Assembly: GCF_006345805.1 (NCBI RefSeq)
Contig: NC_043001.1
Coordinates: 104,470,001-104,534,000 of the forward strand
DNA: 64,000 nt
Source: Octopus sinensis
Taxonomy: Eukaryota
Direction of reading: 5' to 3'
Position 1 is the stretch's first letter, and each line of letters starts with the position of its first letter. A program made the translations under genes and the position numbers. This document shows positions 14,801 to 20,800 of the stretch, piece after piece. The notes below the pieces were generated by a model. The model ran no database searches and was not told the origin of the DNA. It worked only from the letters and a program-made list of their open reading frames with translations.

Positions 14801-17800
14801 TCATAATCATCACCTTCAGTTACGCGGCACTGGCATGGACCATGCATGAATGGTGCTTTTTATGTGCCATTGGCACGGGAGCCAGTTAAACGGCACTGGC
14901 ATGGACCATGCACGAATGGTGCTTTTTATGTGCCGTTGGCATGTCACCAATCATGGGGCCCTGGCATCCACCACACTCGAATGGTACTCTTAATGTGGCA
15001 CTGGCATGGGTTCCAGTCAAGCAGTACTGGCTTCAGCCACAACAATGATTTCACTTGACTCAACAGGTCTTCTCAAGTACAGTTTATTGCCCAATGATTG
15101 ATGTTTACTCTTAAATAGGCCAGTTACGCAACACTAGCATAGGCCACGGTTATGGTCTCACTAGGCTTGCTGGGTCTTCTCAAGCACATCTCCAAAGGTC
15201 TCGGTCGTTTGTCATTGCCTCTGTGAGGCCCAACATTTGAAGGTCATTTTTCACCACCTCATCCCAGGTCTTGCTGGGTCTTCTTTCTCTGTGTGTTTCC
15301 TCCACTGTTAGGGTGAAACACATATTCAAACAGCTCTCCTCATCCATATTCTACAAATGACCATACCAGCACAGTTGTCTCTCTTGTCCAGCTCATCTGA
15401 TGCTTCTTATGTCCAACTTTACTTTCAGGTTGTTTACACTATGTTATGCATGCACACTGATGTTACACATCCAGCAGAGCATACTAGCTTCATTTCTTGT
15501 AAGATTACGCATATCCTCAACAGTCACAGCCTAAATTGTGATCACAGTTATACAACACAATCTCCTCATTTCAATAAAGTAAAAATGCAATTTAAGCAAA
15601 ATGTAATAAAAATATTTACTTAGCTCTGTCCTTGTCAATATCTCTATTGTCCAGTTCAATGCAGAAATCTTCGTAACCCTATAAATATTCAAAATGAAAG
15701 CATTTGTTTAGACTTTTATAATAAAATTAATGATTTAACATCTGCAGTTCTATTTTACCATGTAACTCACTCTTTAATCAACCTGGATATTGCCTCACTT
15801 CCTGAAGTAATTGGTTGTTTTGCTTCGCTACATCCACAGAATGTACACTAATTTACAGATGCTTAATTTGGTCCAAATGCATGAAAGTGAGGGAATTACC
15901 AATAAGGTCACCCAAGAACCAATCTTTTAAATATTTTGGTAGAAAACAAGAGAAATCTGTCATGACATCTCTAGTTAGAAACACATCAGAAAAAACAGGT
16001 GACTTAGATGAAACTGCACCTTGTTACATACTGTGATGTCACAGGTAGGCTAATGATACCATTTACCTTATTTCTTAAATGAATTTATAAGACTTCAGAA
16101 AAACTTCATAGATGACAGAATGTTGAAGATTTTTGCAGCTTTATTTTTAACCCTTTAACAGATTATTCAGTCAAATGTAATTCATATTTATCCACATTGT
16201 TCTGAATTAGTCATGCATTATCTTGTAGATTTGGGGTTTTGATTATGGGATTGTATATGGATGAAACCCAAACTGTTGGTCATGATTATATCCACATGAG
16301 TGAAAATGAGGACTTGTAGATTAGATGTTGCTACCTCTACCATTGCTGCTGCTGCTTCACCTCCTCCCCCTCCTCTCCTATTACTACTACTACAACAACT
16401 ACTACTACTACTACTACTACTACTACTAGGAAGATGACAATGACCACCAGCACCACCACTACTACTACAATTACAGCTATTGCTACAACCACTACTACTA
16501 CCACTACCACTATATTCACCACAGGACTACTGCAGTGTCAACTGACACTGTTGCAATTGTTACCTGTAGTTAGGTTGCTGCCCAATTTCAGACAGTATTA
16601 AGGGATTAACTGCTAATTTAATCCCAACACCAACATGAATTGAAGAAGAGGAGGGGCAAACACTGAATAAAAAAAAAAAAATAACCACCAGCACTGGATT
16701 TTATCCTATCACCTAAGAGTGTGTAATCCAATAGTGATTTCTAGAACCATCGCATTTGTTCAGGTTTATCTACTTAGGAAGTTTATAATTAAATAATACC
16801 AGATTTATGAACAAGTGCGTTATTTTTGGCACTTTTGTAATCTTTTAGCCCTAGGTCAGTCCTTATCCAGCAGACCTATAATCCCAAAAGAACGTTTCTG
16901 GTGACTAAACCCAAAAAGGACACATTTGCAAGGCCTCCATCACTGGTAGGAAAAGGGAAGGATGAAACCATCACTTGTTTGGTATCATCAGACTATATAC
17001 CACAAGTGAATGCTTACTACAGAAAGAATTCCACTGAATGCATCATTGGTACAGCTGGTGGTATTACAATGGACAAGAGATCAAATCTAAAAACCAAAAA
17101 ACAAGTAAAGTCTATGCAAAAGAGTTTCCTAAGAGCTTGCTGCTGCCAAATTTCATACATAACATTTGGCTTGATACCCAGGTTAGGGGTTGAGTATTGA
17201 GATAGATCCTGGAATCACATGATTGCAAACTAAACTGTTTAAATGCAAGTAAATGCTTGTGCCTGCTTTTTGGCTGTGAAAGTGGATGGCTGTATTTTAA
17301 ATGGGTGTGGCCATAGATGGGTAGGGAAGATGTTCAATTTGAAACCACATGATTCCTGATTTAATCCCAATACCCAGCACCTTAGACAAGTGTTTTCTAC
17401 CATAGTAATTGTTTGACCAATTCCTTGTGAATAAAATTTGGAAGATGGAAACTGTGTAGAAGACCAGCTGTTGCTTGTACATTGAAGCCTCTGTCTACAG
17501 CACAATGTTATCTAAGGAAAACACAAAGGCCAATACAGCTTCACAGCAGTGTCATCACGAGCATGGCTGTGAGAAAGGAAAGAGCAGGATGAGATACCAC
17601 AAGGCATCCAGTCAGGTATTTTAACAATCCTGGACTGCTACTATTATTATCAATTTCAAAAAGTGAAAGGTAAAATTAACTTCACTGATATTTGAATTCA
17701 GAATGTAGAAAACCAAGACAAATACTGCAAAGCCTTCTATCCCATGCTTGAATCTCTCTGCCAATATACTGCACAGTAAATAAATCCTATCAACTAACCT

Positions 17801-20800
17801 CTTGGCCTTTGAAGTATTCATCTGCTAGTTTCCTGCAAAAGAAAAAAACAAATTTTCATCACAACATCACAATCATCATCATTATTTCTACATCAGCTCA
17901 CAAAAAGAACCATTACAGAACTGTTTATGTTTGTACATTTTATTATTTTAATCTAAATCTAGAATTTATTTGAATAGGTCTAATCTCCAGTTTTACTTTT
18001 TATAATTGAATCAGGGCAAAATGAAGACAGACCAGGTTGAGATGACAATCATGTTAACTGACAGATCTTGCAGATTTAAACAGGATTATTAAATGTAATG
18101 GTATATGTCTTTACATGACTTTGTAGTGCAGAAGATTTTAAAGACATAATTTCTTATACATTATATATTATTTGTATTAAAATTTCAAATTTGTTTTCAA
18201 TTTCAGCTTCATAAAAATGAGACACTTACATCAAAAAGCAATCATGATTGGCAGATGATTATATCCAAAGTTTGATGTCATCATCATCAACATCGTAATC
18301 ATCATTTACTATCTGTTTTCCATGCCAGCATAGGTTGGATTGTTTGACCAGAACTGGCAAGGTGGGGAGCAGCAACAAGCTCCAGTCCCCTGCTTTGGCA
18401 AGCTTTCTACAGCTGAATGCACTTCCAACCACTTTACAGAGTGCACTGGGTGCTTTTGAAGTGACACCAGCAGAGGTACATCTTACATGGCACCAGGAAA
18501 GGGGAATGTTAATTTTAATCAGAGTTTAAAATATTTATTGTTCAATTCATTTCAATGTGAACTCGGGAAAGAAATGATCTTGAACTGAAAATTCTCCCCT
18601 GTTTCTGTTCTGTAGGTGTATGGAATAGGTTTGAGCCTTTTGTCTTACAGTTAAATACATACAAACAAAAATGTTGCGCAACCAGGACTTACTGAAGTTG
18701 AAATACTGAACAGAGATATTTCATGTTGTCTCATATCAACAATGTCATGGCTTCTCTTATTAATTCCTACATTTATATTTCCTTATATCATTATCATATT
18801 TATACATCACAGTCTCCTCGTAATGCAAAGTCAAAATCAAACTTAAGCAGAATATTATACAATCACTCACTTGGCGTGTTTGCGTCCAAAATCTTCTGGA
18901 TAATCATTCACTTCCTTCAAAAAATCTTTATATTCCTAGAAAAATTACAATACAAGCATTTGTTTTAACTTTATAATAAAAACAGTGATTTGATATTAAT
19001 AGTTCAATTTTTGACTGGTTTCGACTCTTCAATGAAACAAAACACTACCTGACTCAGAGAAACACTATAGAAAAAACAACTAAATCTTTTCTCTATATAT
19101 GCTAATTTCCAGTAAAGAGCTGAAATCATTGACTAATGGGGAATGTTACCTAACTTGAGAAGTGATGCACTAAAGGGATGTAACATAATACTACAAGGCA
19201 CTTCATCTTACACAGTCAACTGATTTTGATATTCCTTTCTTAAAAAGAAGATTCTATGTAGTCACTAAAATATAGCAACAAAATCTCCCTTAAATCTTGC
19301 AAAAAACTAAAAGGTGTGGCTGTGTGGTAAGTCTATTAATTTACATTTGAAAGGTGGAATGGGTATTTCTCCTACCAACCACAAACTCTACCTCTGCCTA
19401 TCACCTGAAATATTATTTCTTGTCTTATGAAAAGATGAGAAAGCTATGTTGACGTCAGCACGATTCTGAAATTCAGAAATTCAAGAAAGGTGTTATGTTG
19501 TCATTTGATCTGCTCAGCTAAATCTTCATCAATTATCATCATCATCATTATCATTTAAAGTCTGTTTTCCATGCTGGTATGGGTTGGACAGTCTGACAGG
19601 AGCCGACCAGGCTCCATTCCTCTATTTTTGAATGGTTTCTACAACTGGATGCCCTTTCTAACACCAACCAATTTATAGAGTGTACTGGATGTTTTTATGC
19701 ATGCTCAGCATGGGCGTGTATATGTGGAATTGGACTGGGTGGATGTTATATGGCACCAGCACCCATGAGCCTCCAAGATTACAAATGTTCAGCTAGAGAA
19801 AGGTGCAGTGGGCATGCCTGTATGCAAGGACAACAACACCTCTACTTAGCTTGATGTGTCTTGTCAAGCACAGCAAACCACCGGGAGCCCTGGACCTTGT
19901 CATTCCCTCTGTGAGACCCAACTTCTGAAGATACTCTCTCACCAATTCATCTCACATCTTCCTGCCTCCCATGCCTTCCACTTTAAAAGTGTTATAAATA
20001 ACGTTTTCTGGAGGGGCAGGTTAGTTTCCATTTTAATTAGGTAGTGCTGCGTGTTGCTTGACCTTAACATCTGAAGGAATAAACAAATGGATGAAGAGGG
20101 AACTGTTGATTTGGTCCAAGTGCATGAAGGTGAGAGATTTCATGCTAAAGGCACCCAAGAAGCAGATGGGGGTGTTAAACTGGGTGGCATTAAAAGTTTG
20201 TAGCCAGTTTTCTGCTACTGGTGCTATTGGTGGTGGTGATGCTTCTGTATACACACCTATATTAAAAAAGGAAGGTGCCTCCCCATACACACAATGATTC
20301 ACCTTCGAAAACAAAATGATGCTAAATCTAGAAATGACTGTTAAGGGCTCCGGCTGCATGAGATAAAACAGATGAAAGATAACAAGTCTGTGGTTAGGAT
20401 GCTTGTCTCTTTCAACTCACATTAACAGAGGATCTACTAACTTATTTCCAAAATCTACACAAACTCAATATGCTGCCTCATACAAAATAAATAAATAGTG
20501 AGAACTGACCTTGTCATTTCCAAAATGACTTTCTGCTAGATTTCTGCAAAAGTAAAAAAGAGACATACATCACCCATCAACATCACGATCATCATTTTTA
20601 TGTCGCTAGAAATAAACAATCATCTCACGAAATTCTCAAAGCTAGAGGATAAACCTTGATCAATTCAAAATTATGTGAATAAAGTAATCTGATTGCTAAA
20701 TGTTTAATCTGTATATTTTTGTAGTATTATCATATTTAATGATGCATATTTTTATGTCCTTGTAGACTGTATTATTTCCAAAATACAACTCATAAGGATC

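What the first reader, a model, noticed from the sequence alone, without database searches (positions are those of the whole stretch)
15620..20543. The 4-exon A+B module looks like one PAH-like four-helix unit
Seen: intron blocks show the duplicated unit is bB-aB-bA-aA (modules 53586-45171, 37066-21990, 20543-15620, 11132-5756, plus partial ones at both edges), about 62-65 aa each. The module reads [49 protein letters not shown]. Against Sin3A PAH1 as I recall it ([47 protein letters not shown]), FG, Y.DFL, an I/F-D/G position and [LY]FKG fall at similar spacing. PAH domains are peptide-binding bundles, so an array of hypervariable PAH-like units would be a new kind of variable binding scaffold. 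The alternative is paired, Ca-incompetent EF-hand-like motifs: the n**nn**n helices fit, but the loop is short and lacks G6/E12.
Basis: inference. Interest (0 to 1): 0.72.

Follow-up and report, generated by a model that had tools for sequence, protein, structure and literature searches.

The report
Octopus-only fast-evolving helical repeat protein
The four small exons are real and encode one 64-residue unit of a huge, uncharacterised Octopus protein built from about 33 helix-loop-helix repeats found in no other organism searched; the unit is not a detectable relative of the Sin3 PAH domain, and its exons change faster than the introns around them.

Summary
Four minus-strand exons (34+65+34+59 nt, AG/GT sites, compatible phases) splice to the quoted peptide. 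That peptide is residues 833-896 of Octopus sinensis XP_036358878.1, "uncharacterized protein LOC115212235", 1935 aa.

The protein has N-terminal UBA-like domains, about 33 half-units of ~32 aa (about 16 A+B modules) and an Ala/Glu/Lys-rich tail. A half-unit profile scored against 1.84 billion representative proteins found only this protein and an O. bimaculoides fragment.

- No Pfam PAH or EF-hand hit in any of 15 modules.
- hhalign of module against PAH gives probability 1.6% and P 0.03, whereas A against B gives 97% and E 1e-10.
- Foldseek of a confident AlphaFold2 model (pLDDT 85) finds no PAH. Its best TM, 0.54, is to a centrin EF-hand pair and is not significant. A four-module model resembles only helical-repeat proteins, weakly.

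Hypervariability is real:
- Between modules, exons are 66% identical and flanking introns 84%.
- Between the two octopus species, exons are 81% identical and introns 89%.
- Hydrophobic core codons are conserved. Surface codons evolve at about twice the intron rate.

It is best read as a new lineage-specific helical repeat of unknown function.

The parts
20510..20543 (-). Module M3 exon e1 (34 nt): (K)[11 protein letters not shown]. It encodes the end of helix a and the a-b loop of half-unit A.
   Evidence: AG/GT sites and frame. Exact match to XP_036358878.1 residues 833-843.
18871..18935 (-). Module M3 exon e2 (65 nt): [21 protein letters not shown](K). It encodes helix b, the long loop with conserved F27, and the start of helix a'.
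17799..17832 (-). Module M3 exon e3 (34 nt): [11 protein letters not shown], half-unit B.
15620..15678 (-). Module M3 exon e4 (59 nt): [19 protein letters not shown](K). It encodes helix b', the short loop with conserved Ile, and the start of the next helix a.
62445..63731 (-). Partial module M0, B half only: e3 63731-63698 and e4 62506-62445. Peptide [31 protein letters not shown]. Equals protein residues 740-771.
45171..53586 (-). Module M1: e1 53586-53553, e2 51727-51672 (56 nt), e3 49105-49072, e4 45229-45171. Equals protein residues 772-832.
21990..37066 (-). Module M2: e1 37066-37033, e2 35192-35128, e3 25847-25814, e4 22047-21990. e4 is 58 nt, which gives a frameshift and an in-frame stop. 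The module is absent from the RefSeq protein. The O. bimaculoides ortholog of e4 is an intact 59-nt exon.
5756..11132 (-). Module M4: e1 11132-11099, e2 9736-9672, e3 8337-8304, e4 5817-5756 (62 nt). Equals protein residues 897-960.

Best explanation
Shown. The window lies inside Octopus sinensis gene LOC115212235. The four exons are one cassette of a tandemly duplicated 4-exon unit. Each cassette encodes two homologous helix-loop-helix half-units of about 32 aa: A (about 33 aa) and B (about 31 aa). The protein carries about 33 such half-units in a row, at residues 384-1445. They lie between N-terminal UBA-like domains and an Ala/Glu/Lys-rich tail.

Each half-unit keeps a fixed set of aromatic and aliphatic positions: L2, A3, F7, Y13, F16 and V/L20, one loop hydrophobic (F27 in A, Ile in B), and the terminal A-K. 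On the predicted helices these line one face. Almost every other position is charged and changes freely.

Inferred:
- The hairpins pack on one another through that conserved face into a small helical domain or a continuous helical rod. All loops are only 3-8 residues long, so there are no flexible linkers.
- The array grew by unequal crossing-over of the cassette.
- Every half-unit is a whole number of codons with the same intron phases, so units can be gained, lost or skipped without breaking the frame. M2 is skipped in the RefSeq model.
- The surface is diversifying faster than neutral intron DNA. This suggests the array is an interaction surface that tracks changing partners in a cytosolic, possibly ubiquitin-linked, setting.

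It is a new repeat family. It is not a PAH domain or a functional EF-hand.
For: Gene identity. A half-unit HMM against 1.84 billion representatives hits only XP_036358878.1 (E 1e-182, 27 stretches) and an O. bimaculoides fragment. The spliced exons equal residues 740-960.

Architecture. Pfam UBA_4 scores 3e-8 and UBA_8 7e-7. There are 33 half-units. The tail is 46% Ala.

A and B are homologous: hhalign probability 97%, E 1e-10.

Helices. AF2 of the module gives pLDDT 85, pTM 0.68 and helices 2-7, 11-21, 29-40, 46-55 and 60-63. AF2 of four modules gives 18 alternating helices, with pLDDT 73-89 across two of the three module boundaries.

Core and surface positions.

Duplication and variability between modules:
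- Intron flanks are 80-95% identical over 300-600 nt.
- Exons are 66% identical against 84% for introns, in 32 of 32 pairs.
- Variable columns are 59% in exons against 29% in introns, p 2e-14.

Orthologous locus:
- It is collinear with the window. Intron identity is 88.8% over 15,094 nt, exon identity 81.2% over 356 nt, p 2.5e-5.
- Amino-acid identity is 68%.
- Core codons have dN 0.05-0.10. Surface codons have dN 0.22-0.29, against an intron K of 0.12. The bootstrap fraction with surface dN at or below intron K is about 0.001.
Against: - No transcript or protein evidence was available here. The RefSeq protein is a computed model.
- The three-dimensional packing could not be inspected because no coordinates or PAE are returned. 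pTM of the four-module model is only 0.38, and one junction has pLDDT below 50. Discrete bundle versus continuous solenoid is therefore unresolved.
- Synonymous divergence in these exons also exceeds the intron rate: dS 0.16-0.28, with 11 differences in 47 synonymous sites at unchanged residues, p 0.013. Measured against dS, omega is about 0.9-1.1 overall and 1.2-2.3 for the surface. Positive selection is suggested, not proven, and it rests on 115 codons.
- Function is inferred from architecture only.
Confidence: 0.6

Rival explanations
1. The 64-aa module is a PAH-like (Sin3-type) four-helix peptide-binding bundle, and the array is a set of variable PAH units.
For: Motif-level resemblance of module M3 to Sin3A PAH1 is real: Y13, D15, F16 and L17 coincide, and FG and [LY]FKG lie within one residue. 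The recalled PAH1 string is correct. The hhalign score of 13.1 lies in about the top 4% of column-shuffled nulls. The module is predicted as four helices.
Against: - No Pfam PAH hit at E<=10 in the module, in 15 modules or in the whole protein.
- hhalign probability is 1.5-1.6%, with only 13 columns aligned.
- D15 and L17 are specific to M3 and are not conserved in the module profile.
- The proline that is invariant in the six PAH sequences compared (P10 of that alignment) has no counterpart in the modules.
- No PAH chain appears in the profile-versus-PDB search or among the Foldseek matches.
- The host protein has no Sin3 features.
Confidence: 0.04
2. The module is a degenerate, calcium-incompetent EF-hand pair. 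Helix b, the loop and helix a' would form one hand, and the next b', loop and a'' the other, so the structural unit would be shifted by one exon relative to the cassette.
For: - The highest TM-score of the module model is to the centrin-2 N-terminal EF-hand pair: TMq 0.54, rmsd 3.2 A over 63 columns.
- Both inter-helix loops keep one hydrophobic residue, F27 and the Ile of 'ID'. This recalls the loop position 8 of EF-hands (my knowledge).
- AF2 draws a short beta-bridge between the two loops of one module, residues 26-28 and 58-60.
Against: - That Foldseek match has E 9.2 and probability 0.10.
- No Pfam EF-hand family is hit in any module.
- The loops are 4-8 residues with no DxDxDG...E pattern, as read directly from the sequence.
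- The beta-bridge appears in only one of four modules.
Confidence: 0.1
3. The array is a weakly constrained, charged helical spacer or rod. Its 'hypervariability' is only absence of constraint on the surface, plus an underestimated neutral rate. It is not a binding surface under diversifying selection.
For: - With transition-aware methods overall omega is about 0.9-1.1.
- dS in the exons is itself above the intron rate.
- The whole protein evolves fast. The N-terminal region is 82% identical and the first repeats 75% identical between species whose introns differ by about 11%.
- 39% of residues in the repeat region are charged.
Against: - Exons diverge more than about 15 kb of intron in the same locus, for orthologs and for paralogs. 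Pure neutrality cannot produce this unless the introns are constrained.
- Surface dN is about twice intron K, with a bootstrap fraction of about 0.001.
- The substitution spectrum of exons is similar to that of introns, so there is no sign of a special mutational process.
Confidence: 0.25

Closest known systems
Sin3 PAH (paired amphipathic helix) domain, Pfam PF02671
   Same: It is about 65 aa. It is internally duplicated as two helix-loop-helix halves. It has an amphipathic Y..F(L) helix and an F-x-G turn at similar spacing.
   Different: There is no profile or structural match. The proline that is invariant in the six PAH sequences compared is absent. PAH occurs up to about three times per Sin3 protein, separated by linkers (domains seen), not as about 16 contiguous copies. 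The host protein is unrelated.
EF-hand pair (calmodulin or centrin lobe)
   Same: Four helices arranged as two helix-loop-helix motifs. One conserved hydrophobic residue sits in each loop. It gives the best, though weak, TM-score of 0.54.
   Different: The loops are too short and lack the Ca ligands. There is no sequence-profile similarity. The Foldseek match is not significant.
Alpha-solenoid repeat proteins (TPR, HEAT/ARM-like, designed helical repeats)
   Same: Uninterrupted tandem helix-turn-helix units of about 32 aa, with a conserved buried face and a variable exposed face. The only Foldseek matches of the four-module model are such proteins.
   Different: No curated repeat family matches. 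Those Foldseek matches have E of 0.8 or more and TM 0.10-0.16. There is a strict two-unit (A/B) periodicity, and each unit is split over two tiny exons.
Repeat-per-exon arrays of giant proteins (nebulin, titin PEVK); comparison from my own knowledge
   Same: Repeats are encoded by short, phase-compatible exons. Super-repeat cassettes were duplicated together with their introns. Cassettes can be skipped in frame.
   Different: No sequence relationship: the Pfam nebulin family is not hit. Here exons diverge faster than introns.
Accelerated-evolution genes (snake venom PLA2 isozymes, conopeptides)
   Same: [quoted passage not shown] This is summarised for PLA2 genes in PMC7285919.
   Different: Those are small secreted toxins. 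This is a large protein, probably intracellular, and the fast-evolving part is a repeat array. I saw no hydrophobic N-terminal signal-like segment by eye; this was not tested.

Membership tests
Sin3 PAH domain | Match to the curated family profile (Pfam PF02671) | tested here: not met
   hmmscan at E<=10 on the module, at E<=1 on the full protein and at E<=10 on each of 15 modules gave no PAH hit.
Sin3 PAH domain | Profile-profile similarity to bona fide PAH1/PAH2 sequences | tested here: not met
   hhalign probability is 1.5-1.6%, score 13.1, P 0.03, with 13 columns aligned. The shuffled-column null has a 95th percentile of 12.2 and a maximum of 14.7. The positive control, A against B, gave 97% and E 1e-10.
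Sin3 PAH domain | Four-helix fold superposable on solved PAH structures | tested here: not met
   Foldseek of the pLDDT-85 model against the PDB gave 13 matches at E<=10, none a PAH entry. PAH structures are in the PDB: 2rmr, 2czy, 1e91, 1g1e, 2f05 and 6xaw were returned by the sequence search. Caveat: the model is predicted and no direct pairwise superposition was possible.
Sin3 PAH domain | Peptide-binding hydrophobic cleft | not testable with these tools
   No coordinates are returned, and no binding assay is possible.
EF-hand | 12-residue Ca-binding loop (D-x-[DN]-x-[DNS]-G-...-E) | tested here: not met
   Read directly from the sequence. The loops are DYPEDFG and NRDID, 4-8 residues long, with no Gly6 or Glu12.
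EF-hand | Match to EF-hand family profiles | tested here: not met
   No Pfam EF-hand family is hit. hhalign against calmodulin hands gives P 0.13-0.41.
EF-hand | Paired helix-loop-helix lobe fold | tested here: inconclusive
   TMq is 0.54 to centrin-2 N-domain, but E is 9.2 and probability 0.10. A beta-bridge between loops appears in one of four modules.
Alpha-solenoid / helical tandem repeat | Contiguous tandem helix-turn-helix units of 30-45 aa | tested here: met
   There are 33 units of 30-34 aa without linkers. Alternating helices are predicted.
Alpha-solenoid / helical tandem repeat | Regular stacking into a superhelix, or membership of a curated repeat family | tested here: inconclusive
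   Only weak Foldseek matches to VPS35, alphaRep, TPR and 14-3-3 (E 0.8-7, TM 0.10-0.16). pTM is 0.38. No Pfam repeat family is hit.

The most novel reading that the evidence does not exclude
The array is a germline-encoded variable recognition scaffold. Each two-hairpin module would present an independently and adaptively diversifying charged surface on a fixed helical core. Modules would be added, lost or skipped as in-frame exon cassettes. It would serve an evolutionary conflict, for example with viruses or transposons, or in reproduction, and would be tied to ubiquitin-like signalling through the N-terminal UBA-like domains. That would make it an intracellular, helical-repeat counterpart of variable LRR-type receptors, apparently invented within octopods.
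Probability: 0.15. Interest if true: 0.8.

Novelty: new variant of a known kind. Interest (0 to 1): 0.5.

Why it matters
- The repeat family has no detectable relative outside Octopus in 1.84 billion representative proteins, and I found no literature on it.
- Protein-coding exons that diverge faster than about 15 kb of surrounding intron, between paralogous cassettes and between species, are rare outside toxin, immune and reproductive genes.
- If the diversification is adaptive, this is a new example of how a lineage builds a variable interaction surface from a duplicating exon cassette.
- If it is not adaptive, it is still a clean case of a fold held together by about eight core positions per 32 residues while the rest drifts.
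- The PAH idea can be dropped. That prevents a misleading annotation.

Tried and rejected
- PAH homology: rejected. The evidence is Pfam, hhalign with shuffled-column nulls, a profile search of the PDB, and Foldseek.
- EF-hand homology at sequence level: rejected.
- Origin of the repeat from the protein's own UBA-like domains, which I considered because of the shared 'AK+hL.K' look: hhalign probability 0.3%, rejected.
- Villin-headpiece and nebulin resemblances noticed by eye: no Pfam support.
- SEP-like look of residues about 1570-1620: no Pfam or PDB sequence hit.
- An RNA-editing-type or other special mutational spectrum in exons: transitions to transversions are 40:27 in exons and 573:457 in introns. 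The share of A/G changes is only mildly higher, in purine-rich exons, so this is not supported.
- Word-indexed protein searches returned nothing for the repeat. A search with the N- and C-terminal regions returned only the O. bimaculoides N-terminal fragment.
- A pseudo-alignment of rotated arrays for AF2 failed, because MAFFT slid the identical units onto each other. It was replaced by natural non-overlapping segments.
- No Rfam family is present in the window.
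Full report
OBSERVATION

On the minus strand the four blocks 20543-20510, 18935-18871, 17832-17799 and 15678-15620 are each bounded by AG and GT. Their lengths are 34+65+34+59 = 192 nt. The first base of e1 and of e3 completes a codon begun in the previous exon, and e2 and e4 each end two bases into a codon. The cassette therefore reads through as 64 codons: (K)[11 protein letters not shown] | [22 protein letters not shown] | [11 protein letters not shown] | [20 protein letters not shown].

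BLASTN of each exon with 250-nt flanks finds the same four-exon order at 53586-45171 (M1), 37066-21990 (M2) and 11132-5756 (M4). An e3+e4 pair lies at 63731-62445 (M0). Flanks are 80-95% identical over 300-600 nt. A blind scan for AG-N34-GT with the x-[LI]-A-x-x-[HY]-[FC] motif returns exactly the nine known short exons on the minus strand and none on the plus strand. The scan for the long exons returns the eight known ones, against one chance match on the plus strand.

- I found no exon below 5756.
- e4 of M2 is 58 nt and carries a frameshift and an in-frame stop.

WHAT GENE THIS IS

A profile of the eight half-units in the window (A3) was scored with HMMER against 1.84 billion representative proteins. 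It found two proteins at E<=0.001:
- XP_036358878.1, "uncharacterized protein LOC115212235 [Octopus sinensis]", 1935 aa, E 1e-182, 27 matched stretches.
- A 129-aa Octopus bimaculoides fragment, XP_014787006, E 4e-25.

The spliced exons M0B-M1-M3-M4 are identical to residues 740-960 of the O. sinensis protein.

The protein has this layout:
- Four N-terminal UBA-like segments. Pfam UBA_4 scores 3e-8 and UBA_8 7e-7; the alignment of the four segments is.
- Thirty-three contiguous half-units of 30-34 aa, from 384 to 1445, in alternating A and B types. That is about 16 A+B modules.
- About 190 residues with no detectable family.
- A 295-residue tail that is 46% Ala, 17% Glu and 13% Lys.

Outside the repeat, the only homolog found is the O. 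bimaculoides ortholog fragment XP_014782120.1. No paper mentions any of these identifiers.

ANATOMY OF THE MODULE

The A and B halves are homologous: hhalign probability 97%, E 1e-10 over 31 columns.

Across 15 modules, the conserved columns are almost all hydrophobic. In M3 numbering they are:
- L2, A3, F7, Y13, F16, V/L20 and F27.
- A32, L35, A36, F40, Y46, F/L49, L53, the Ile of the 'ID' motif, and the A of the closing 'AK'.

The remaining columns are mostly K, E, D and R. Charged residues make up 39% of the repeat region.

AlphaFold2 of M3 with a five-row alignment gives pLDDT 85 and pTM 0.68, with helices at 2-7, 11-21, 29-40, 46-55 and 60-63. Each half-unit is therefore a helix of about 12 residues, a 3-5-residue turn, a helix of about 10 residues, and a 4-8-residue loop. 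The first helix runs across the cassette boundary. The conserved residues fall at i, i+3/4, i+7 spacing, which is one face per helix.

A four-module model (protein residues 707-961 with four natural rows) gives pLDDT 74, pTM 0.38 and 18 alternating helices. pLDDT is 73-89 across two of the three module boundaries, and below 50 at residues 119-135, the M1 to M3 junction. No coordinates are returned, so I cannot say whether modules are discrete bundles or part of one continuous rod. The absence of any linker favours the rod (inference).

TEST OF THE PAH READING

The tests that followed were negative:
- Pfam gives no PAH hit for the module, the 265-aa spliced array, the full protein or any of 15 modules, even at E<=10.
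- The 15-module profile against a profile of six real PAH1/PAH2 sequences taken from the PDB output gives probability 1.5-1.6%, score 13.1 and P 0.03, with 13 columns aligned. These columns are the Y..F helix.
- Two hundred column-shuffled PAH profiles give a median score of 8.4, a 95th percentile of 12.2 and a maximum of 14.7. This is a marginal resemblance of one amphipathic helix, chosen after the fact.
- The module profile against all PDB sequences finds no PAH chain and nothing convincing (best E 0.0075, an unrelated methyltransferase).
- Foldseek of the module model against the PDB finds nothing at E<=0.001 and no PAH among its 13 matches.

OTHER FOLDS

The highest TM-score for the module is the centrin-2 N-terminal EF-hand pair: TMq 0.54, rmsd 3.2 A, but E 9.2 and probability 0.10. 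Two further hints point the same way. Each inter-helix loop has one conserved hydrophobic residue, and one predicted module shows an inter-loop beta-bridge.

Against this, no EF-hand profile matches. The loops lack the Ca ligands.

The four-module model matches only helical-repeat proteins such as VPS35, alphaRep, PLAP, TPR proteins, 14-3-3 and designed repeats. These matches have E 0.8-7 and TM 0.10-0.16. The repeat is not related to the protein's own UBA-like domains (probability 0.3%).

I therefore file it as a new helical repeat with no demonstrable homolog.

HYPERVARIABILITY

Between paralogous cassettes:
- Exons are 66% identical and the 150-nt intron flanks 84% identical. The exon is the more divergent in all 32 pairs.
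- 59% of exon columns vary, against 29% of intron columns (Fisher p 2e-14).

Between species, the O. bimaculoides locus (L001, CM046605.1) is collinear with window positions 26131 down to 25:
- Substitution-only identity is 88.8% over 15,094 mostly intronic positions, ranging from 0.83 to 0.91 in every segment.
- The eight length-matched orthologous exons are 81.2% identical over 356 nt (p 2.5e-5).
- Amino-acid identity is 68% over 115 codons here. It is 75% in the first repeats and 82% in the N-terminal region.

Splitting codons by the conserved-column map gives the following:
- Core: 4 replacements in 30 codons, dN 0.05-0.10.
- Surface: 33 replacements in 85 codons, dN 0.22-0.29.
- Intron K is 0.12. 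The bootstrap fraction with surface dN at or below intron K is about 0.001.

There is a caveat. Synonymous divergence in these exons is also above the intron rate:
- dS is 0.28 by Nei-Gojobori and 0.16-0.23 by transition-aware methods.
- There are 11 synonymous differences in 47 synonymous sites at unchanged residues, p 0.013.
- Against dS, omega is about 1 overall and 1.2-2.3 at the surface.
- The substitution spectrum does not differ much from that of introns.

The same pattern, introns more conserved than coding exons with KA about equal to or above KS, is the classical signature reported for snake venom PLA2 genes (summarised in PMC7285919).

I conclude that the fold-defining core is under purifying selection. 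The surface evolves at least neutrally and probably adaptively. With 115 codons this is suggestive, not proven.

HOW IT LIKELY WORKS

Shown:
- A duplicated four-exon cassette.
- Half-units that are whole numbers of codons with identical intron phases.
- A conserved hydrophobic stripe per helix.
- Fast-changing charged surfaces.
- UBA-like domains at the N-terminus.

Inferred:
- The array expanded by unequal crossing-over before the two Octopus species split. Paralog intron K is about 0.18 and ortholog intron K about 0.12, and the cassettes are collinear in both species.
- Cassettes can be dropped in frame. M2 is skipped in the RefSeq model, and its e4 is broken in O. sinensis but intact in O. 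bimaculoides.
- The protein is cytosolic and uses the array as an extended interaction surface or spacer.

What it binds is unknown.

NOVELTY AND VERDICT

The gene is annotated but uncharacterised. The repeat family is undescribed and, in these databases, confined to Octopus. It is a new variant of a known kind, the helical tandem-repeat protein, with an unusual evolutionary signature. The PAH label should not be used.

Noticed in passing
window 21990-22047 (-); L001 about 7010-7068: Exon e4 of module M2 is 58 nt in O. sinensis, which gives a frameshift and an in-frame TGA. Its O. bimaculoides ortholog is an open 59-nt exon (GYSNLLKDISRGDVDKRRA). The RefSeq protein omits all four M2 exons, although e1-e3 are open and keep the core residues. 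An internal AG (cttttgag|AAC) would give a 38-nt in-frame exon. This could be a recent pseudo-exon, an assembly error in an A7 run, or a skipped cassette.
   Followed up: partly
window 17986-18082, 34224-34320, 50794-50886 (-); L001 10660-10747 and 1-70: A block of about 95 nt in the e2-e3 intron, about 800 nt downstream of e2, is about 97% identical among M1, M2 and M3. It is 100% identical over 44 nt between species, well above the intron average of 84-89%. It occurs only three times in the window, so it is not a high-copy repeat. There is no Rfam match. The M3 copy folds with z -2.9, but the 3' stem uses sequence that is not conserved. It may be a splicing-regulatory element.
   Followed up: partly
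orthologous exons of M2-M4 (window 25847-5756) against L001: Synonymous sites in these exons differ more between the two Octopus species (pS 0.235 at unchanged residues) than about 15 kb of surrounding intron (p 0.112). The binomial p is 0.013. Transition bias in two-fold codons explains only part of this.
   Followed up: partly
window 26407-30357 and 6886-7326: The 9-kb e2-e3 intron of M2 holds several repeats: a long (AT)n tract (26407-26910), a tandem array of a 67-bp unit (27078-28145; the same unit recurs at 14817-14941), and reverse-transcriptase-like ORFs of a non-LTR retrotransposon (28172-28906 and 29380-30357, minus strand). A related fragment lies at 6886-7326 on the plus strand.
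   Followed up: no
L001 (O. bimaculoides CM046605.1, 4752645-4788449): The O. bimaculoides ortholog is annotated as at least two separate short gene models: LOC106877687 (N-terminus plus the first repeats, 673 aa) and LOC106881215 (129-134 aa). The locus contains 5651 N, and the ortholog of M3 e2 falls in a gap. The single large gene is therefore fragmented in that annotation.
   Followed up: partly
protein residues 825-841 (junction of M1 e4 45171 and M3 e1 20543): In the four-module AlphaFold2 model, the only stretch with pLDDT below 50 is the helix spanning the M1 to M3 junction. This is exactly where the RefSeq model skips M2. Equivalent junctions elsewhere score 74-89.
   Followed up: no
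The word-indexed protein search did not return XP_036358878.1, even for a query sharing long exact stretches with it. The exhaustive HMMER search did return it. A 'no hit' from the indexed search should therefore not be read as absence.
   Followed up: no
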